A stretch of 53,690 nucleotides of DNA, filler included, from Sluysia triapertura (lineage: Eukaryota), in assembly GCA_046118255.1 (NCBI GenBank). It is 4 parts of 4 records of this genome, joined end to end, with 100 filler letters (N's around TTAATTAATTAA, not from the genome) between each part and the next. Parts side by side here need not be neighbours in the genome. Positions count along the whole stretch, not along the records: positions 41,748 to 53,690 come from JBJNIA010154382.1; 3 more parts are not named here. One strand, written 5' to 3'. The notes under the pieces are model-generated. The model made no database searches. It was not told where the DNA came from and worked only from the letters and a program-made list of their open reading frames with translations. This document shows, one piece after another, positions 41,748 through 53,690 of the stretch; within the stretch, counting starts at the first letter, position 1, and each line of letters begins with the position of its first letter. The position numbers were made by a program, and so were the translations under genes.

Positions 41748-43269
41748 ATATATATATATCCCAAAGCGACTTTTTGGTGGCGCAATATCTACTGTACAAA
41801 GTAGATTAAAGTTTTTGTTTTAATGAATAAAAAGGAAAACAATAGATAATTATTAATTAATTAATTTGAATAAAACATTATGTTTAAAGCTTTATCGTCT
41901 ATAATTATTAATTGTATTTGTTATTATTTGTTTTGTTACAGTTTATTTATAATAAATTTTGTAAATTATTTTGTTTTGGGGGACAATTACCATTGGTAAC
42001 ATGTTCGCTTGAGAAGAAAATCTTGCACTAGAGCCCATGAAATTTTTTCTTATGAAATGACTTTAAATAGCATTGGATTTTTTAACTGCGCAAAAATAGT
42101 CTAACACCTTATCGAAAACTGATAGGATGAACACATCGAGTAAGACCAGATACGTCGCTTATATGATTAACTAATGTATCATTTTTCTTTTAGGTCAAAA
42201 AGCGTACCATGGAGAATACAATCAGTTCTGTCGTCGATGTCAAGCAGAAAGTGGTGTGTGTTTTATTTTTGATAAGTACGACAGAAAAGAAAAATTTATC
42301 AAGTAATATTCTTTTTCTATAAATTTTTATGATACTAGAAATTTGATTGGTTAATATTAAAAATGTTTGAAATACTTCTTTTAAAATTATTTGCTGCCTT
42401 AAGCAAACAAACATAATTTGCTTGTCTAAAAACTAAAATTATCACACATTTTCAAAATGTTTTGAGGAAAACTATTGACGGCTATAATCATAATTTGTTT
42501 ATCATAACATCATGTTCTGACTTGTTCAAGACATTAATATTCGTACAAAAAATGTTCTGAGCTGTTAAGTACAGTGTTATGTTCATTAATGGAAATATTT
42601 TTGTTGGCTATAGCCATCATTTACTTTCAAGTTGACAAAAATTGGCGTATTTTGGGATAAGGTGTTAATTTAAAGCGCTGATAAGTCTTTGCAAATATTA
42701 TGAAAGTTTGTTTTATACATAAGCACAATTGAACTAATTTGATGTTATCTTTACTTGTCTGTGTTTTTCGCGTTTTAAAACTCAATTAAAATCTTAACTA
42801 TATTATCCAAATTTCCACAATGATATTAAATAACTGAAGTAACTGAAAGTCTATTTGGTAAAAAACAACCCAGTAAATTAAATAATATAATGTATAACTG
42901 GTTTCTTTATAGTAAAAATACGCCAAATATAGTTATCGAGAATGAATAAGAGCGATTATTATTATGTGCCTGTACTTGTAATACTTTTGTTTTCCAAATG
43001 TCTGATTTCTCTTAGATCCATAGATAAACTTAAGTGATATTTCGATTTATGTATATTACGTATGCATAAGTTTATACAGTTATATTTGGAATTTTGTTTT
43101 GTTAAGACGATGAAACAAGGGGACATAAAGTACTGTGTACTTTAATTTTCTTCAATACATGCTTACATCTTTACTCTGAAGTTAAATGACAACGGTAATT
43201 ATTCAAGGATTATTGATTGATTCTTTATTGAATTTTTTAATATAGACATTGTTTATTATTTTCGTTAAG

Positions 43270-43538
43270 TTATCATCATTATTTGTTACCAAACCTGGTG
43301 AATTGTGTGGTGTCGAATCGATCATAACAACAGAACCAAGTTTTTATTCTATTCGAACCAATGAAATCACTCAAGTGATCATATTGGCGCGTGATTTTGT
43401 TTATTCATTAATTAAAGAAAATAAGAACGTTTTGTTAAAATTAGGCAGTTTAGTTGTTCGACGTATGTCACCATTTCTGCGACAAATTGATTTCGCATTA
43501 GAATGGACGAATATCAGAGCTGGCCAAGCACTTTATAT
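43270..43538 (+). CDS. PNPLA6: PNPLA6/7 (neuropathy target esterase/swiss cheese) exon 'e': second half of cNMP-binding domain 2 and start of domain 3
   Basis: ttaAG|LSSLFVTKPGELCGVESIITTEPSFYSIRT...VVRRMSPFLRQIDFALEWTNIRAGQALY|GTTAGT. RMSPF.RQ.DFA..W....AG.ALY is the NTE signature. Starts in phase 0, ends in phase 2. Confidence 0.92.
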
Positions 43539-43573
43539 GTTAGTTTATATATTACTATTTATACAAGTTTTAA

Positions 43574-43955
43574 CCCTTTGCGGTCCTATTTAATTCCAAC
43601 GAAAACACCAAAAAACATACTCAAATCGAATTTAAATTATTTATTAATTTAATACGTTATGTTATATTTATGTATTCTAAATTCTAGCTTACCAATATAA
43701 TGACACTAATATTCCTATTTGTTTACGATATTACACTTGCATAACTCCGATAAAACTAATCTGTATACTTCGCACATAGTACAGTGGTAGTATAGTGGTC
43801 CGAACTTGACGATAATAACGTGTGGGTGCAAATAAAAATACAAAATGTAAACATTTTCTTATCGGACCATCTTCACCATGTAACAGATTACATAAACGTT
43901 TCAATGTTTATGTTAAATTAGCCTCGGGGCTGCCTCGACAGTGAAGCGCAAAGGG
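43574..43955. mobile_element. piggyBac-like non-autonomous element (MITE), 382 bp
   Basis: TTAA|CCCTTTGCG ... CGCAAAGGG|TTAA. Confidence 0.85.
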
Positions 43956-44081
43956 TTAATATATGCTAATTTTATTACATTAGAAATATAAATGTGTTTT
44001 ATAATACGTGTTTCGCGATTTTAAAATTAATACATTTTTTAGTATGTTTAGTTTCTAACATTGGCATTTATTTTTTATATT

Positions 44082-44122
<41 letters not shown>

Positions 44123-44125
44123 CAG

Positions 44126-44255
44126 GAGAGTTTAGCTTTACCAGATTGTCAAGTACTTCTTTTAGCAAATAAATATCCTAATACCAGTGATCATATTCTT
44201 CTTAGAAGTTTATCTACAACTTCTATTGGTGGAAGTGCTGGTCAAGATTTTAAAG
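44126..44255 (+). CDS. PNPLA6: PNPLA6/7 exon 'a' (linker after cNMP domain 1)
   Basis: tacAG|ESLALPDCQVLLLANKYP...GQDFK G|GTTATT. ESLALP resembles PNPLA7 ESQAIP; phase chains with the next three exons. Confidence 0.6.
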
Positions 44256-45076
44256 GTTATTGAGTTTTTCAAGATTTATTTGAAATATATTTAATGAATT
44301 GTTTTTCTAGAGATTTTCTAAGGAATTTTTTTACATATAAAAATTTAATAATTTAATAATACAATTTAATAATAAAGATTATGGGTGACTTTGGAAATTA
44401 TGGTTTCGAATTTAATTATTTCTAGTACTTTGATTCCACTATATGCTGAATTTAACATCATTTACCACTAAAAGAGTGCTAAGATCTAAAAACGAATATA
44501 TGTTCGAGTTCAACAATGCGTTATTGTTCTTTATATCTTCTTCATAAAGCATAATCTTTACGAGTTTACATAGCACTTTTAAACTACCATCAATATGAGT
44601 ATTTGATTTTCAATTTCAAGAAAGTTACTATGGCATTTTAACATTGCTTTTAGATAAGTATATTTAAAAGATCCAAGTACTTTTCTATCATCACCTTTAT
44701 CACTGAACTTATTGTTAATTTCTCTACCTTGAGTAGTTCGTATGTATCTGTCTAAGCGTTACTATTCCATTTTGCTTATATAATTGTGTCTATATTTAAT
44801 CGTTAACATTATCAGCGGAGAATAGATTCTGCTTTAAAATGTATCTGATACTCAAAAATATGTAAATGATAAAGCAAAATCCATAGTAATGGTATACAAC
44901 ATTTACTATGTTTAGATTCAAAGGTAAGGAACTTACATACCATTACATACAAAAACGATTACATACATCCAATGAAAATTAAAGATTCTATTTAATTTTT
45001 GAATTTATTTCAGAACTTTATTATTATTATTATATTATTATTATTATTATTATTAATTATTATTATTATTATTAAG

Positions 45077-45214
45077 AAATCAATTTCATTAATGTTCATT
45101 CATCTTCAAGTTCTCAGACAAATTCTTCCAGTGGGAGCAATTTGAATCGTCTCCAAGATTTGGAACTCGGTGAAGCCAAAAATTCTACTGTTGTCAGATC
45201 TACATCTATACATC
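45077..45214 (+). CDS. PNPLA6: PNPLA6/7 exon 'b' (Ser-rich linker)
   Basis: ttaAG|(E)INFINVHSSSSSQTNSSSGSNLNRLQDLELGEAKNSTVVRSTSIH C|GTAAGT; phase 1 at both ends. Confidence 0.6.
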
Positions 45215-45625
45215 GTAAGTGTCAACTATTGATTTATTCTACTCATTATTTCAATTTATTTCAATAATTGTGAACTTTTATCAAAAATTTCAATTAACTT
45301 CAATTAAAATATTTTAAAGTTAATTCTATGTAATTCTATTTTGAGGATTTACAACACTAAATGAATTATTACAATACTACATTCATATCAAAGTACGCCT
45401 ACTATAAAAACAAATAAAACATGAACTGATTACCGGATAACCTTTTTATAAATAAAATAAAATACGAATATTATTATATTCGTCTTCTTTCAATTAGTAT
45501 TTTTACTGTCTACGATCATTGTCTTACATTCATTACACAGATTACACGATTTTATTTCTAAGTTAAATGTCGTTGCCTGTTTGGTCTGTTGAATATTATT
45601 TGCCTTCTAAATATTTACATTTTAA

Positions 45626-45697
45626 TCCTTTCGATACGGTAGGTACACACATTTGTACCACATACAACCGCGATATTTGAATACCGTGCCGAAAGGG
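45626..45697. mobile_element. 72-bp piggyBac-like mini-element
   Basis: TTAA|TCCTTTCGATACGGTA ... TACCGTGCCGAAAGGG|TTGA; imperfect 16-bp TIRs. Confidence 0.7.
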
Positions 45698-46654
45698 TTG
45701 AATAAGGCTCTAAATATTGTTAATTAAGCAAGAAAGTATTTTCAACTATTAAGATCATAATTGAACAACAATTGGGTAATTTTATTTGTAAAATATTTAT
45801 ATAATTATTCTTGGAGTACAGGCCTCTAAAGTGCCATTTAGAATGACTTTAATAAAACAAAATGGAAATGAAAGAAAGTTCAAAAATTATAAATTGTAAA
45901 CCATGTTTTTAAAATATTTTAGTAATATTTTACATGCTTTAATTTGAGTGTGGATTATAAAATTTTTTCACTCAAGTTAAACATTATGTATTTTTAATTA
46001 TGTATTATAGTTGTGTGCCTTTAGTAATGACGATCATTCAAGTGATATATCTGTTATTACTATTATTATCATTATATTATTTTTAATTTAAAATAATTGC
46101 AAAATTGATTCCAAAAAGAGCTTGAAAAACCGAAAAATGGAATATTAAATGAAAATAGAAGGATAGGAGTGAAAAGAAGCAAATATTGAAACATGCAGTT
46201 AACTTATATTTACGATTTTTCTGTTTGGATTTATGAGAAATTCGAATGTTGGATAACAGTTGTAGATTCTAATCATTTAAGTAATTCATTAAATCCTTGT
46301 GGCCTACTGATTTTATTTGAATGCTGGTACCCAAAACCTTGGACTAAATAATTAAAATAAAAAGATCTATTTATAACAAATACTGAACTAATTTACTAAG
46401 TATTTCCTCTGTTCCCCGAAATATGGTATACATTTCAAAAAAATCGTAGATTATCGAGAGTATCGGAAATGTTCCTTATATTAGTATTGTATATATTGAA
46501 TGTCACTAACATAATTGACAGGTGTTGCGTTCGTGTAAAGTAAGAGAACTTGACGATCAAAGATAAGCTTTTTTAAGATTTAAAGAAAAGGCACTCTGAT
46601 GTATATAATATATTTTTTATGTTAAATTTTAGTTTTTATTTTTTTCGTCAATGT

Positions 46655-47153
46655 ATACTACCCTATTTTCGGACAAGAAATTAATAATTAATCAATATAA
46701 TGATTCATGGAATAATTATATTCCACTTAGGAATTGCTGCTTTTACAGTCATTTTCTACCAATATTATCTATATTGTTTAGTTAATATTTTTATCAACTA
46801 CTGCAGATGCCGTGCTTCCCCGAAAATAAAGCAGGGTAGAAAAAAATCATTTGCAAAACATCTTTAAATATTCAATTTTCATATCGATTAATTACAAGAA
46901 TATACTTTCGGAAGAAACTAAGCTTCTCCCGACTCCAGATTGTTATTTTATCGATCATCGGAACAAATTTTCTGCTATCACTTTCCATTTTATACATCAT
47001 AAAAGTTTGATGTTAAAAATAAAATCTGCTAATAACAAATAGATACCGTGTTTTCCTGAAACACGATACGACTATTGTTTTCTATTTTCTGGATTATAAG
47101 GTATGCCTTCTCAAATTTAACTAAAAAAACCTTATAATCCGTAAAATATGGTA
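46655..47153. mobile_element. Cluster of pogo/Tigger-type MITE termini
   Basis: TACCCTATTTTCGG...CCGAAAATAAAGCAGGGTA (~46658-46839) and TATTTTCTGGATTATAAGG...CCTTATAATCCGTAAAATATGGTA (~47083-47153). Confidence 0.55.
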
Positions 47154-47205
47154 ATTATAAACAGTTTATTTTAAACTTATATAGATAAAGATATACATTT
47201 TTAAG

Positions 47206-47378
47206 CTACTGTTAAAGAATTGAATCGTCTAACCCCAGTTTCAAAAGCTGGTAAAAATCGTATTCGTAGAAGTTCTTATACTTCGACATTAAAAGGTCGT
47301 TCCAGTAATTTTAAAGAACAATTTTATGAATACTTGAATGCTGCCAAGAATGATATTGCTAATATACTTGGTTTGAAA
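47206..47378 (+). CDS. PNPLA6: PNPLA6/7 exon 'c'
   Basis: ttaAG|(P)TVKELNRLTPVSK...FYEYLNAAKNDIANILGLK|GTATGT; resembles the NTE AAK..LA.L helix before cNMP domain 2. Confidence 0.75.
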
Positions 47379-48185
47379 GTATGTTGTTTTTTAATTATAT
47401 TTTCGTTATTAAATTGTTGTAGAATTTTACCTTTGTCATTTTATTGAATAAGTTAGTGTTTAGTGAAACTTACAAACTTAATCTGCTTTTACAATCTTTA
47501 ACCAGTCTTTCTAATGTTTCGTATTTTTCCATAAAGTAACTATCAGTTCAAGTCAATTTTATTAAAAATTTTCCTCCAATTGCAATCCATTCTGTTATAT
47601 ATCTTCCACAAAACACACCTTCCTAAAACGATTAATATTTCTCTTATCCTTCTTTTAATTGGCTCTTATTTTCTTTAATAACATTGGAGTTTTCTTCTCC
47701 AAGGGTTATTAACTCCTTGAGTCCTGATTTAATATATTGAACATATTTAATTTTACTCTAATATCTTGATGAATGAATACATTTATTTTATAAACATAAC
47801 CACAATATAATTTTATTCAGAAAACAAGTAAATGAATTTGGCGAATGAGACTCGTCATAGTAATCTATTACCAAGTCTAAAATGTATCGCAGTATTTCTT
47901 CATAAATGTTCTAAATGTTTATTTAATTTCATAAAACAAAATTTTATTAATTTTTAATTATGAAAATTAAATGTTACCTCGACATTTTTAAAGCGATTTT
48001 GACTGGTTTTCTATAAATAAACTTCTTTAAATAAACACAGGATGTTTTATAAGTTGGATCCAATTGAATAATAAATTTAGTAACAATTTTTTTAAATATT
48101 ATATAAGTTTTAAAAGTGTATCAATTTCATATGATTATGTATTAAAGCATTTAAATATCAAATTTAATATTATTGATTTATTCAG

Positions 48186-48335
48186 AATCAAACTGTACTA
48201 TCTAAATTGAAAATTACTATTGTTCAACCTAGTGTTACGTTAGTGCGAGAAAATGAGGAAGATACTGACATTTATTTTGTTGTTTCTGGAGAACTGATTG
48301 CACTCCAACATTCAATAGGAAAAGATACTTCTAAA
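48186..48335 (+). CDS. PNPLA6: PNPLA6/7 exon 'd' (first half of cNMP-binding domain 2)
   Basis: ttcAG|NQTVLSKLKITIVQPSVTLVRENEEDTDIYFVVSGELIALQHSIGKDTSK|GTACGT; cNMP-domain YFVVSGEL motif; ends in phase 0. Confidence 0.85.
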
Positions 48336-48500
48336 GTACGTATTTATTAATTGTTTTTATTTGTATAATAATTTAACTATTTCGAAAACTAATTATATAT
48401 TTACATGTGACGTAAATTTTAATAATAATTATTCTAATTAAATCTAAAATCTAGTAGATATAATTAACACCTTATCTTGCCCAAAAACGCACTTTTTAAA

Positions 48501-48980
48501 CCCTTTAACCGCCGCTGAGCGCATTTTTGCGAACTTAAATTTATTTGAGAGATTATATGAAATATATGTTAGCAAAACCATTAAAAAGCTGGCGCCACTT
48601 GTGCTAGTGTTAATTTCAAAATTAATAAAAAATGTATAATTTTTCATGAATTTTCAATAAAATAGTATAAAATGTGAAAATTGGTAAATTTAGCATTCTC
48701 TATCAAAGTGTTATATAGTGTGGAATGTTCTAATGTAATCTGCCATCTTCTAACAAAAGTAATAATAACTTTAGACTTATAACATTTTCACTTATTTTAT
48801 TTGATTCAATTATTTTTCTCAAAAAATGGTGGTATATTATTGAAATTACTTTGTGCACACACTATTATGCACATTATCCTTACTTAATCCTGTAAAACAA
48901 TACGTAACATGATCTGTTTGAGCCTGAGAAACTTGCAGAAATACGAGTGGGACCAATCGGTCCCATCGGCGGCGAAAGGG
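48501..48980. mobile_element. piggyBac-like non-autonomous element (MITE), 480 bp
   Basis: TAAA|CCCTTTAACCGCCG ... CGGCGGCGAAAGGG|TTAA, with a subterminal palindrome TGGGACC..GGTCCCA. Confidence 0.8.
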
Positions 48981-49278
48981 TTAATTGACAACTAATGATA
49001 CTAATACTTATTATAATGATATCTTTTTCTTTAAATGTATTAGTAACTATATAATTTAAGTTTAGTATTTTTTTAGCATATTTAGATACGTTATATATAA
49101 ATTCTTATTTTAACGTAACTTTCTGTTAAATATACTTATTAAATAATTATTGCGCGTTTTTTTAATTTCATATTAAAACTATGCATTTAAATCTATAAAA
49201 GCAATAAAATAAAATGAATAAAGATATTAGTGACTGTGATGGTAAATTTTAATTCTTAATAATAATTATAATGCATAG

Positions 49279-49599
49279 ATGATCTGGAATTAGAACCTTG
49301 TCCTCATTGCTTTAGAACATTTAATGTGGATTCCTTAGTAAGTTTTATCTTTATTATTTTTATGTAGAAAAGACATAAAGCAATTTGCTACAAATTTCAA
49401 AAAAGTGAAAAATTGCGACAACGCAATTTAAAAACTAAAAGTTATTTGAAACTTCAAAATAAAGATGTTAATATGGCACAAATTGAAGAAATATTAGAGA
49501 GAAAGCAAATACGAAGAAATAAGTGGAGAAAAGATCATGAACGGTTTATTAACAAAATATTAACACTTTTGAAGTTAAAGAATGAGACCCTTTATGAAG
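49279..49599 (+). CDS. ZC2HC1-family zinc-finger protein, two exons (49279-49337 and 49368-49599) split by a 30-nt intron
   Basis: DLELEPCPHCFRTFNVDSL|KRHKAICYK forms a C-x2-C-x11-H-x3-C finger only after splicing; downstream NKWRKDHERFIN matches the ZC2HC1 WR..HE.FI motif. Confidence 0.8.
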
Positions 49600-51334
49600 G
49601 TTATAAGTATACATTTAGTAAACTGAATTTATTTCATTAAAACGCTTAAATTAATTTTAATAATTTTAAAACTGTAAATTAATTTTTACTGTAAATTAAC
49701 ATTACTTATGCAAATTACTAATTTTTATTTAATTGCTTTAAGTCTGAGACAAATATGTCTTAACGTAATACAAATTCAGACATTTTAAAATTATAGCCGA
49801 TTAAGTATAAACATTTTTGGTTTTTTATGTTTTCATCTATTTTTGATTGTATTATTTGACACATTGGGTCAAATTATCCCAAAATAAATTCAACAAAATA
49901 ATTAAGCTTAAGAAAATCCATTAAAACAATTGTTACATGCTGGAAATATAGTTTTATTTCAATTTTTTTGCCTTTAGACTCACATTGACATTTTCTCGCC
50001 TTTTAGTCTTTAATTCATTAAGAATTTCAATTAAGAAATTCTTTGAATAAAAAATACTCATTTCTAAAGAAAATTATTTTGTATATTATCTTGTCTTGTG
50101 ATTGAATTTTTGAGGACAGTCTGGATATTTTGTTGAAAATAAATGCTTGTTGTGCATTGCTAAATCAAGAATATTACTGGAACTAAATGATATTTTTATA
50201 CATTAAATATAAATAATCGTAAAGTGTTTTTTGGTTACCATAAAATGTTAATATCTAATAAATTCAATTAAAATATATAATGCTAAATTTTTTGCTCAAC
50301 TTTATTGATTGTATAAATGATTTGGAGATTTGAAGATAACTAATTTGCTTTGATTAACTAATATAGTAATACCTGAGAGCTTATACAGTAATTTGTATAA
50401 ATTTGATGTTATGGAATTCAAAAGGTTATAATCAGTGTGCAATGAATGTATTGAATATGAATATTGAAATAACAAAGAGAAGGTTCAAATAAATTAACAT
50501 TATGAAAATATGTCTTAAAAGACTCAAATAAAACAATTGATTACAAAGATACTATATACAAATAATAACAATGTGTTGGTTCAATTTTTACTTAAAAAAT
50601 TATTAATAATTTCAACAAAATATCACAGTTATAACAGCTTAAACTGTAAATCAAATGCACAAACAATTAAACAGTTCAACATATAAAATCTTTAAACTTT
50701 AAAATAACTATTAACGAATAAATATTAATGTGATAATGGAAAAATTATATGATTCATTTTTCAATGATGATTGATTTCAATTAACAAATCTTTTCGCAGT
50801 TATTTGGACCCGATTAAATAAATTAGACAAAAAATTAAATTTTGCTTTAACTCATTTTCCAATTATAGAAGATAGTTTAACAAGAAAGTGAAATACCACA
50901 GAAAGAAAAGAACTGTTAGTGGATGAGTATTTTGTATGTGAACAAAGTCATGCTTATAAAAAAGTAAAGAGCAAGGAACTAGAAGTGTTTGACAATAATG
51001 AAAATGGAACGTAATGCATTACGCGAAGAACATGATAAATTATGCTCTTTAATTGAAGAATATTCTAAAACACTTCATAAAAGAACTTATAATATCAAGA
51101 ATTTTAAATAATATTAAAAATATCTTTAGATTATTAAAACTTAATTTAGGCTTAAGGCCTTGAAAATAGCTAGTTAATTCATGAATTATTTTCATGATAA
51201 TAGTTTTAATTATAATAATTATAAATTATTACGACTGTGTTTATGTTTTGTATGTATTGAGTAATTTGTTTATGTAAGAAGTGTTGATTTGTGTTGGTGT
51301 TTGTTTGTGATTTTCATGATCTGGAGTTCTCTAC

Positions 51335-51378
<44 letters not shown>

Positions 51379-53587
51379 TAATAATAATAATACTAAGAAT
51401 AGTAATAATAATAGTAATAATAATGTAAAATAAACACAATATTCATATAAACATAATACTCAAAATATTGTATAAAATACTTATAAAATTTCTCAAAATA
51501 AAATTCTCATGTAAATAGAATTCTCTCAAAATTTCTCATAAACATGTTGTAAATATAATTGCATGTAAATGTTTGATAATGTCTGAATACTCTGTGGTGC
51601 TCTAATCAGGTACGAATGTTGATATTATTACTTTTAATGGAGATAGTACAAAATTAAAATCTAGAAACATCAACAATAACATTAATAAATTTCTGAATGT
51701 TTCAATAGTGGAATCATCTTAAATTGAAATTGTGTAGAAATAATATAAAATCATAATTTATAATCGCTAAATATTATGATTGATTAACTAAATAAAATCA
51801 TTTAAAAATTTAATTTAGATTGAATAATTTTAAAGAATTGTAAAACTTTAAACAGAATCGCCTTAAATTATAATAAATAACTTGTAACCAGGATATTAAT
51901 TAGATGTAGAATTATAATTCATTTGTGTAATTCATTTTAATCTTTTAATAAATATGATTTAAATTTTTAGTTATAGTTTAACAGCTGTAGTTCAATTTTT
52001 ACAGTGGATAAATGTGTAGTAATAATTTAAATTTTTAATAGTAGTCTAATAGTAATTGTGATTTTCAATTTCTTAGTGATTATTTGCATAAATTTAATAT
52101 AAAAAAAACTAATAATAAGAATTAAAATAGTAACGATAGTCAGAGTTGTCAGATAAGATTTGCAGAATCGAATATCATTGGACTTTTCATTGAAGTTTGG
52201 CGATCGCGGTAAAAATACAATTGTAGTGGACATTCGGTGGAACTTTAATACCAAATTTTGTAGTAAGTTATTCTTCATATGACTAAAATTCATTTTTTCA
52301 TTACTATCACGTAATTAAATACTTTGCTAATATTTTTTTTATAAATTTTTGGCTGATTTAATTTTAACACTTTATTATAAGCTTTTAAGTTTGATCGTAT
52401 TTTATAATAAATCTATTTAATTAAATTTATTTTGTTTTATCTTTTGTGTTTTGTTTAAAGTATTTACGCGCTTTTCTTGTATAGGCAACTGTCAAAAAGG
52501 AAACCATTGAATCTTAAACTACAATAAACAAAGCACTAAAAAGATGTGAAAATAAATGCTAACGAAAACAATTTTCATGACTTTAAGCTAATAAACGACT
52601 TGCTAAAAACTTAAATATACAAAATAATTTTAAAATCAACAATAAATTTAAATTAGTGAAGTTATAAGGAATGTGATAACCCGTTAAACAACCTTCATTG
52701 AAGCAGAAATACATATTGATACTTGTAATATATATAACAAATACCTAAAGAGTAAATTATTTTACTATGTATCAGTGTTTGTTCGACTGTTGTAGTTATT
52801 ATGAAGCAATATTTTTATATTCTTAAACTTGACATTGCAGCATATAATCAGTATTATTTTCAACAAAATATCCAGAATATTCTCAAAAAAGCAATCACAA
52901 GACAAGATGTTTTTCTTTTAAAAGGAGTACATTTTCAAAGAATTCCAAATTGAAATTTTAAATGAATTAAAGAAAACATGTAGTAATGTAATCATTAAAT
53001 TACAAATTAGTGTTTGTGATTTACAATTATATAATTTCGAATAAATCTATAAGTTCTAAATATCGTTTTATTTTTCAGTTTTATACTTTTATTTTTGTTC
53101 TAGTAAGAAAAGTTACCGTTCCTCACTAATAGGTTAATGTACCCTCTATTTGAATAAAATGTAAATACAATTATTAACATAATATAAATTGTTAATACGT
53201 GAGCTTTTATTATCAATAATTTAGTTTCGGACTTGCAGTTATTTTGGATGAAGAAAAATATTGTTACAATAATTAAATTTACTATTGCGAATGTTTAATT
53301 CACTTGGTAATAGGTTTTTGTTATCAGTTAGATATTGTTATTTTCAATTTTTTTATATGAATTAAATTCAGATGATTATGATGAATAAACTTAAATACTG
53401 ATAGTACTTTTTAGGTCTTCTGGATAATATAAATTTAAAAATATAAGAACCTAATAATAACTGAGGTGCTTTAACGATTCAATTTATATAAATAAGAGGG
53501 TAAGGTTTCTTAATTTTCTGTTGAGATAAATTTATTGTCATAAATTTAAAGTCTGTATGTATAAAAGGGGTAATTATGTTATATTAA

Positions 53588-53677
53588 CACGTTCGCTAAC
53601 ATTATGAAAAAGTGCACTTGTGATATATTTTTGCCATTGCTATCGTCCCAAATACGAGCCGTGTGGTAACGAACGTG
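53588..53677. mobile_element. 90-bp TTAA-flanked mini-element (piggyBac-like)
   Basis: TTAA|CACGTTCGCTA ... TAACGAACGTG|TTAA. Confidence 0.8.
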
Positions 53678-53690
53678 TTAAGGTGGCAGA

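What the first reader, a model, noticed from the sequence alone, without database searches (positions are those of the whole stretch)
43270..48335. Circularly permuted (scrambled) exon order in the PNPLA6/7 (NTE/swiss cheese) gene
Seen in sequence: five intact same-strand exons with GT-AG ends lie in genomic order e,a,b,c,d. Exons a-b-c-d chain in frame (phases 1, 1, 0). Exon d ends in phase 0 at ...SIGKDTSK and exon e starts in phase 0 at LSSLFVTKPGE. Exon e ends in phase 2, so splicing e to a gives ATG AGA GTT TAG, an immediate stop. Established: in NTE proteins the segment encoded by d is directly followed by the LFV..PGE segment encoded by e, forming the two halves of cNMP domain 2. The exon that must follow d therefore lies about 5 kb upstream of it, and I saw no second copy of e in the 5.3 kb after d. 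Inference: the options are a tandem intragenic duplication with its junction at 43539-44125 (which holds a piggyBac MITE and a TAT microsatellite), a contig derived from circular DNA, a misassembly, or a locus that needs trans- or back-splicing or DNA unscrambling to make NTE.
Basis: partly seen in the sequence, partly recalled or inferred. Interest (0 to 1): 0.8.

Follow-up and report, generated by a model that had tools for sequence, protein, structure and literature searches.

The report
Permuted NTE exons on short contig
On this 11.9 kb contig the exon that must follow exon d of the neuropathy-target-esterase (PNPLA6/7) gene really does lie 4.6 kb upstream of it, but this is most likely the junction of a duplicated block (real or made by the assembler), and no reads could be examined to settle it.

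Summary
Five + strand exons with AG/GT ends lie in genomic order e, a, b, c, d. Joined a-b-c-d-e they give 286 codons with no stop. Joined e-a they stop after three codons.

A profile built from 40 full-length NTE/PNPLA6-7 proteins places d at positions 418-469 (E 2.8e-7) and e at 467-554 (E 2e-30). So e is the direct continuation of d, yet it sits upstream. No other NTE exon, neither the one before a nor the one after e, is found anywhere in the piece on either strand. Six related loci from other organisms are all collinear.

The cause could not be decided.

The contig (11.9 kb) is shorter than one period of the implied repeat. The e-a spacer consists of 35 nt, a 382-nt TTAA-flanked MITE and 170 nt. 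My best reading (0.55) is that the contig spans the junction of a direct duplication of the a-to-e block. That duplication may be real (for example recombination between MITE copies) or a false duplication. A plain mis-join is the main rival (0.25). True scrambling that needs trans-splicing is not excluded but unlikely (about 0.04).

The parts
41748..43269 (+). Sequence upstream of exon e, presumably the 3' part of the d-e intron. It holds no NTE exon.
   Evidence: NTE profile search of all six-frame ORFs of 12 codons or more, and tblastn with 40 homologs, found nothing here. GC is 0.264.
43270..43538 (+). Exon e: the C-terminal half of cNMP-binding domain 2 of NTE/PNPLA6-7. It starts in phase 0 and ends in phase 2.
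   Evidence: Profile positions 467-554, E 2e-30. phmmer against 1.84 billion representatives gave 269 hits, the full-length ones being NTE. Pfam cNMP_binding positions 44-89. The intron positions on both sides match those in L001.
43539..44125 (+). The e-to-a spacer, which must hold the junction of the permutation: 35 nt, then the MITE, then 170 nt including the (ATT)n run.
   Evidence: Sequence read directly. Splicing e to a gives a stop after 3 codons. There is no N in the piece.
43574..43955 (.). 382-nt MITE-like element with TTAA on both sides (43570-43573 and 43956-43959) and 9-nt terminal inverted repeats.
   Evidence: Read. Alignment with two other CCCTTT...AAAGGG elements of the piece shows only the termini are shared.
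44084..44121 (.). (ATT)n microsatellite lying directly before the acceptor of exon a.
   Evidence: I17: 37 nt perfect.
44126..44255 (+). Exon a: poorly conserved linker between cNMP domains 1 and 2. Phase 0 in, phase 1 out.
   Evidence: Open frame, splice sites, chains to b. No significant homology.
45077..45214 (+). Exon b: Ser-rich linker. Phase 1 in, phase 1 out.
   Evidence: No significant homology.
47206..47378 (+). Exon c: end of the linker and start of cNMP domain 2. Phase 1 in, phase 0 out.
   Evidence: The profile hit 390-414 is collinear with d but not significant. The ...AKNDIANILGLK end resembles ...AKEDLLRILGL in L001, where c and d form one exon.
48186..48335 (+). Exon d: the N-terminal half of cNMP-binding domain 2. 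Phase 0 in, phase 0 out.
   Evidence: Profile positions 418-469, E 2.8e-7. P0013 residues 467-523. Pfam cNMP_binding positions 6-30.
48336..53690 (+). 5.36 kb downstream of d with no NTE exon. It holds another MITE-like element, a small same-strand gene-like unit and a pair of 55-nt inverted repeats.

Best explanation
The contig spans the junction between two direct copies of an internal block of the NTE/PNPLA6-7 gene. The block is exons a, b, c, d, a long d-e intron, and exon e. The gene is not scrambled.

The contig is 11.9 kb. One period of the implied repeat is at least 11.9 kb: a-to-d 4.2 kb, plus at least 6.9 kb of d-e intron, plus e 0.27 kb, plus the 0.59 kb spacer. So only 'end of copy 1 (e) / junction / start of copy 2 (a-d)' is visible. 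The collinear d-e-f path lies off the contig, and NTE mRNA would be made by ordinary cis-splicing.

The second copy may be real. Unequal recombination between MITE copies in the intron before a and the intron after e would leave exactly e - MITE - a, possibly on one haplotype only. Or it may be assembly-made: an uncollapsed haplotype or a traversal of a cycle in the repeat graph.

Shown here: the exon order, the phases, the homology, and the absence of other NTE exons. Inferred: that a second copy exists, and how it arose.
For: - e continues d in the protein but lies 4.65 kb upstream of it, on the same strand. All five exons are intact and have good splice sites. A circular permutation of intact collinear exons is what a direct repeat looks like through a window shorter than its period.
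- Neither the exon before a nor the exon after e is on the contig. So the simple model 'e moved in front of a' has no support: exon f is not within 5.3 kb after d.
- The junction interval is a MITE with short unique flanks. That is the layout expected from recombination, or from a graph turn, at a repeated element.
- The contig ends in an (AT)n run at one end and just past a small TTAA-flanked inverted-repeat element at the other, as when an assembly breaks at repeats.
- Relatives are strictly collinear and compact, and the d|e and e|f intron positions are conserved. The ancestral order is therefore d-e-f.
- PMC9516828 documents false exon gains inside genes. It also reports that small unplaced scaffolds are often wholly false duplications.
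Against:
- There is no N gap in the piece, whereas false duplications on one scaffold are typically separated by gaps.
- The model needs a d-e intron of at least 6.9 kb. That is more than 3 times the largest other intron here (1991 nt), and it would hold what looks like a same-strand gene. In relatives this intron is about 70 nt.
- A real duplication of this kind would be expected to damage an essential gene, because e of copy 1 would splice to a of copy 2 and give a stop.
Confidence: 0.55

Rival explanations
1. Plain mis-join or mis-ordering of single-copy blocks. The genome is collinear (a b c d ... e f). The assembler, scaffolder or gap filler put the 1.8 kb e-bearing block in front of the a-d block, joining them through the MITE or the (ATT)n run.
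For: - The join interval consists almost entirely of a repeat element and a microsatellite.
- The contig is short and ends in repeats.
- Mis-assemblies and unsupported gap fills at such sites are documented.
- Only one public run holds the stretch, with 0.82 of the sampled words.
Against: - There is no N anywhere in the piece.
- The three MITE-like elements on the contig are different families, so they cannot be confused with one another.
- A wrong turn from e to a needs a second copy of the same MITE exactly in the intron before a, and no read pairs would support that turn.
Confidence: 0.25
2. A real single-copy rearrangement. This allele, or this gene copy, is broken at the e-a junction and is a null allele or a young pseudogene fragment. 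An intact NTE may or may not exist elsewhere.
For: - The e-to-a splice gives an immediate stop.
- A different same-strand gene-like unit starts 880 nt after d. This could mean the NTE block ends there.
Against: - All five exons keep open frames and consensus splice sites over 286 codons in a genome of about 25% GC, where stops are frequent. Any inactivation would have to be very recent.
- NTE is conserved and single or low copy across animals (and established knowledge).
Confidence: 0.08
3. True scrambling that is repaired at the RNA or DNA level. The exons are single copy in the order e, a-d. NTE mRNA is made by trans-splicing of two pre-mRNAs, by splicing of a read-through or rolling transcript, or after programmed DNA rearrangement.
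For: - Intact exons and splice sites, with matching phases: d ends in phase 0 and e starts in phase 0.
- The 30-37 nt introns in the neighbouring gene-like unit, and nearest homologs from flatworms and rotifers, point loosely to a lineage in which spliced-leader trans-splicing is known. That last link is from my own knowledge, and the organism was not identified.
Against: - There is no RNA evidence at all.
- To my knowledge no metazoan gene is known to need unscrambling of internal exons.
- Back-splicing of d to e would give a circular RNA, not an mRNA (PMC3270023 and PMC4238349).
- Every relative examined is collinear.
Confidence: 0.04
4. Circular DNA origin. The contig derives from an extrachromosomal circle, or from a self-ligated fragment, of the a-to-e region. 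Alternatively such a circle was reopened inside the d-e intron and re-inserted elsewhere.
For: A circular permutation is the formal signature of a circle. Non-NTE, gene-like sequence follows d.
Against: The two contig ends share no overlap and no direct repeat of 18 nt or more. Nothing marks a ligation point. Such molecules are rare in assemblies.
Confidence: 0.03

Closest known systems
False exon gains / false duplications in draft assemblies (Ko et al. 2022, PMC9516828)
   Same: Exons of one gene appear out of place or repeated on a short contig. Repeats lie at the seam, and small unplaced scaffolds are the usual carriers.
   Different: No duplicate copy is visible on this contig, and there is no N gap between the blocks. 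Depth and k-mer tests could not be run.
Intragenic tandem duplication by unequal recombination between dispersed repeats (established knowledge, for example Alu-mediated exon duplications in human disease genes)
   Same: The junction has the form last duplicated exon - one repeat element - first duplicated exon, on the same strand, and splicing across it gives a frameshift.
   Different: The second MITE copies, the second exon copies and doubled depth were not observed.
Scrambled micronuclear genes of spirotrich ciliates (Oxytricha, Stylonychia; established knowledge)
   Same: Coding segments lie in permuted order in AT-rich DNA.
   Different: Here the segments are spliceosomal exons with GT-AG ends at positions shared with other eukaryotes. 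No pointer repeats were looked for, the introns are 0.6-2 kb, and the homologs are metazoan.
Back-splicing / exon-scrambled circular RNAs (PMC3270023, PMC4238349)
   Same: A d-donor to e-acceptor join across this contig would be a back-splice.
   Different: That process gives circular RNA from collinear genes. It does not rescue a permuted gene into a linear mRNA.
Genic trans-splicing (mod(mdg4) and lola in Drosophila; own knowledge)
   Same: Exons that cannot be joined in cis are joined from separate transcripts.
   Different: In those genes the alternative 3' exons are trans-spliced to a common 5' part. Here an internal constitutive domain half would have to be supplied, and there is no RNA evidence.

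Membership tests
NTE / PNPLA6-7 (swiss cheese) family | Cyclic-nucleotide-binding domains in the N-terminal regulatory region | tested here: met
   Exons d and e match the two halves of Pfam cNMP_binding (positions 6-30 and 44-89; E 0.022 and 9e-4, below the cut-off taken singly). An NTE-specific profile gives E 2.8e-7 and 2e-30 at adjacent positions.
NTE / PNPLA6-7 (swiss cheese) family | NTE P-loop-like domain and patatin esterase domain | not testable with these tools
   Both are present in the homologs. The contig holds no exon beyond profile position 554, and the rest of the gene lies off the contig.
NTE / PNPLA6-7 (swiss cheese) family | Best full-length matches are named NTE/PNPLA6/7 | tested here: met
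   Mactra NTE, Stegodyphus PNPLA7/NTE, Athene PNPLA6, Euroglyphus patatin-like phospholipase. Identity to exon e is 38-43%.
Tandem (direct) intragenic duplication | A second copy of the block, doubled read depth, and reads crossing the novel junction | not testable with these tools
The contig is shorter than one repeat period. No second copy is on it.
False duplication / mis-assembly | Gap or unsupported fill between the copies; half or very low depth; discordant pairs (PMC9516828) | tested here: inconclusive
   There is no N in the piece, so the gap criterion is not met. Depth and read pairs could not be examined.
Programmed unscrambling (ciliate type) | Segments bounded by pointer repeats and eliminated sequences, with no need of splice sites | tested here: not met
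   All five segments are bounded by AG...GT with matching phases. Both boundaries of e are conserved intron positions in L001. Pointers were not searched for.
piggyBac-type MITE | TTAA target duplication, CCC...GGG terminal inverted repeats, many copies in the genome | tested here: inconclusive
   The TTAA flanks and 9-nt terminal repeats are present. Copy number in the genome could not be tested, and the other two elements on the contig share only the termini.

The most novel reading that the evidence does not exclude
Exons a-e are each single copy and the e-a adjacency is real in the germline. An essential, otherwise collinear metazoan gene would then be permuted in the genome, and functional NTE mRNA would be made by joining d to an upstream e. 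This could happen by trans-splicing between two pre-mRNAs or by programmed DNA rearrangement.
Probability: 0.04. Interest if true: 0.85.

Novelty: already known. Interest (0 to 1): 0.25.

Why it matters
If the e-a adjacency is an assembly product or a duplication junction, its only consequence is practical. Gene predictors will truncate or split NTE in this assembly, and the contig should be flagged.

If the duplication is real and fixed, it would be a natural case of an essential neurodegeneration gene tolerating an internal exon-block duplication.

Only the unlikely single-copy reading would be of wide interest. It would be the first internal-exon permutation of a conserved animal gene rescued at the RNA or DNA level.

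Tried and rejected
- **Looking for this species in another assembly.** All came back empty:
  - exact look-up of three ORF products;
  - word search with the exon-e ORF, which returned only P0001, a 50% relative;
  - a 26-nt exon-e pattern in the metagenome contigs.
- **PDB.** The sequence search with exon e gave no NTE structure, only weak unrelated hits.
- **Exons a and b.** Homology tests found nothing significant.
- **Neighbouring ORFs.** Pfam on them found nothing usable. The C2HC zinc-finger reading of 49281-49400 is my own pattern recognition.
- **Joined exon model.** I did not fold or search a joined exon model. Joining was done only inside scripts, to count stops.
- **Rejected: 'e moved in front of a' or 'a-d moved behind e', with the rest of the gene in place.** Exon f is not within 5.3 kb after d, and no cNMP-1 exon lies within 1.5 kb before e.
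- **Rejected: retro-copy of a circular RNA.** The introns are present.
Full report
**What is there**

The piece 41748-53690 is 11,943 bases, about 25% GC, and contains no N. On the + strand it carries five exon-like blocks with AG acceptors and GT donors:

| Exon | Coordinates | Phase in | Phase out |
|---|---|---|---|
| e | 43270-43538 | 0 | 2 |
| a | 44126-44255 | 0 | 1 |
| b | 45077-45214 | 1 | 1 |
| c | 47206-47378 | 1 | 0 |
| d | 48186-48335 | 0 | 0 |

- Exon GC is 31-36%, against 22-26% in the sequence between them.
- Joined in the order a-b-c-d-e they give 860 nt with 286 open codons. The two other frames have 19 and 26 stops.
- Joined in genomic order, e to a reads ...QALYMRV-stop.
- By phase, e cannot be joined in frame to any of a, b, c or d, so on this contig e is a dead end.
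For b, the acceptor has to be the AG at 45075-45076, directly after a (TTA)n run.

**What the exons encode**

- Exon e, searched against 1.84 billion representative proteins, gave 269 hits at E up to 1e-3.
- The full-length hits carry NTE_Ploop, two or three cNMP_binding domains and Patatin. Their sources name them neuropathy target esterase, PNPLA6 or PNPLA7, in a bivalve, spiders, a mite, a bird and a bdelloid rotifer.
- Pfam places d on positions 6-30 and e on positions 44-89 of the cNMP_binding model. Each is weak alone.
- tblastn of Mactra NTE puts residues 467-523 on d and 522-607 on e.
- A profile I built from 40 full-length homologs puts c at 390-414 (not significant, but collinear), d at 418-469 (E 2.8e-7) and e at 467-554 (E 2e-30).

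So e is the immediate continuation of d within one domain, and it lies 4.65 kb upstream of d.

Exons a and b have no detectable homology. They fall in the linker, which is poorly conserved in the family. They rest on the open chained frame, the splice sites and composition.

**What is not there**

The same profile search over every six-frame ORF of 12 codons or more, and tblastn with all 40 homologs, found no further NTE exon in the piece on either strand. There is no cNMP-1 exon upstream, no exon f, and no second e in the 5.36 kb after d. Exon f is the next exon; in the relative L001 it begins QGDLSD and follows e after about 70 nt.

**Relatives**

- A Logan contig of another organism (L001) has the c+d exon, a 72-nt intron, e, a roughly 70-nt intron and f in that order. 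Its intron positions and phases on both sides of e are the same as here.
- Five metagenomic loci (L002-L006) are also strictly collinear along the profile.
- The ancestral order is therefore d-e-f, and the permutation is peculiar to this contig.

**The junction**

- Between e and a lie 587 nt: 35 nt (which includes the TTAA), a 382-nt element (43574-43955), and 170 nt.
- The element has TTAA on both sides and 9-nt terminal inverted repeats. The 170 nt ends in an (ATT)n run and the acceptor of a.
- Two other elements with CCCTTT...AAAGGG termini are on the contig, at about 45630-45705 and 48505-48975. They share only the termini with this one.
- The contig starts in an (AT)n run and ends just past a small TTAA-flanked inverted-repeat element. 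Its two ends share no overlap.

**What could not be done**

- Only one run holds the stretch, kept as contigs, with 0.82 of the sampled words. No RNA run is listed.
- No other assembly of this species turned up by exact-product look-up, word search or DNA pattern.

The cause of the permutation is therefore an inference.

**Reasoning on the cause**

A same-strand circular permutation of intact, otherwise collinear exons is what a direct repeat looks like through a window shorter than its period. Here the period would be at least 4.2 + 6.9 + 0.27 + 0.59 = 11.9 kb, which is the contig's own length.

Three-breakpoint models (e moved before a, or a-d moved behind e) predict f shortly after d and the exon before a shortly before e. 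Neither is seen.

The layout e - one MITE - a has two natural sources:
- unequal recombination between two copies of the element, one in the intron before a and one after e;
- an assembler turning from e back to a through a collapsed repeat.

False exon gains inside genes are documented, as are small unplaced scaffolds that are wholly false duplications (PMC9516828).

Against the duplication reading:
- No second copy was seen.
- There is no gap in the piece.
- It needs a d-e intron of at least 6.9 kb, although the other introns here are 0.8-2 kb and the same intron is about 70 nt in relatives.
- That intron would hold what looks like an independent same-strand gene beginning 880 nt after d.

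I therefore assign:

| Explanation | Probability |
|---|---|
| Duplication junction, real or assembly-made | 0.55 |
| Plain mis-join of single-copy blocks | 0.25 |
| Real single-copy break (null allele or young pseudogene fragment) | 0.08 |
| RNA- or DNA-level rescue of a truly permuted gene | 0.04 |
| Circular-DNA origin | 0.03 |

The remainder is unassigned.

**Comparison with known things**

In kind, this is either a false exon gain or mis-join, or an intragenic duplication junction. Both are well known.

It does not meet the definition of ciliate-type scrambling. The segments are spliceosomal exons at conserved intron positions.

Back-splicing of d to e would give a circular RNA, not an mRNA (PMC3270023 and PMC4238349).

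**Verdict**

- The family assignment is confirmed for c (weakly), d and e.
- A scrambled gene is not shown.
- Interest is low to moderate until reads are examined.

The decisive tests are copy number and read depth of the five exons, long reads across 43539-44125 and downstream of d, and RNA junction counts for d|e, e|a and e|f.

Noticed in passing
window 49214-49640 (+): A small gene-like unit starts 880 nt after exon d. It has an ATG at 49214, then two very short introns with GT-AG ends (49242-49278, 37 nt; 49338-49367, 30 nt), then an open frame to about 49610. Across the second intron it reads CPHCFRTFNVDSL|KRHKAIC, which I recognise from memory as a C2HC zinc finger of the ZC2HC1 type. 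Pfam on the single exons found nothing. The joined model was not searched. Introns of 30-37 nt beside NTE introns of 0.8-2 kb suggest a bimodal intron length distribution.
   Followed up: partly
window 50088-50142 and 52854-52908: A pair of 55-nt inverted repeats, 91% complementary and 2.7 kb apart (I4). It probably marks the ends of a DNA transposon of about 2.8 kb. Short coiled-coil-like ORFs (50919-51111) lie inside it.
   Followed up: no
window 45630-45705, 48505-48975 and 53586-53681: Three more TTAA-associated elements. Two have CCCTTT...AAAGGG termini and belong to families different from the junction MITE. The third is a roughly 95-nt TTAACACGTTCG...CGAACGTGTTAA inverted repeat at the contig end. 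TTAA-targeting elements seem abundant in this genome's introns.
   Followed up: partly
window 42209-42253 (+): A GC-richer exon-like block 1 kb upstream of e: ag|...ACCATGG start context, MENTISSVVDVKQK, then GT donors in phase 0. That phase is compatible with the phase-0 acceptors of both e and a. No homology was found. It could be an alternative first exon or could be chance.
   Followed up: partly
window 44084-44121 and 45016-45075: The acceptors of exons a and b are each directly preceded by a long (ATT)n/(TTA)n microsatellite, which seems to stand in for the polypyrimidine tract.
   Followed up: no
L004 8493-9317, L005 12017-12841, L003 2080-2905: In these related metagenomic NTE loci, profile positions of about 998-1046 (patatin region) are matched twice in tandem by neighbouring small exons. 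This could be a pair of mutually exclusive alternative exons or a local exon duplication.
   Followed up: no
They lie in the a-b intron, in AT-rich low-complexity sequence.
   Followed up: no
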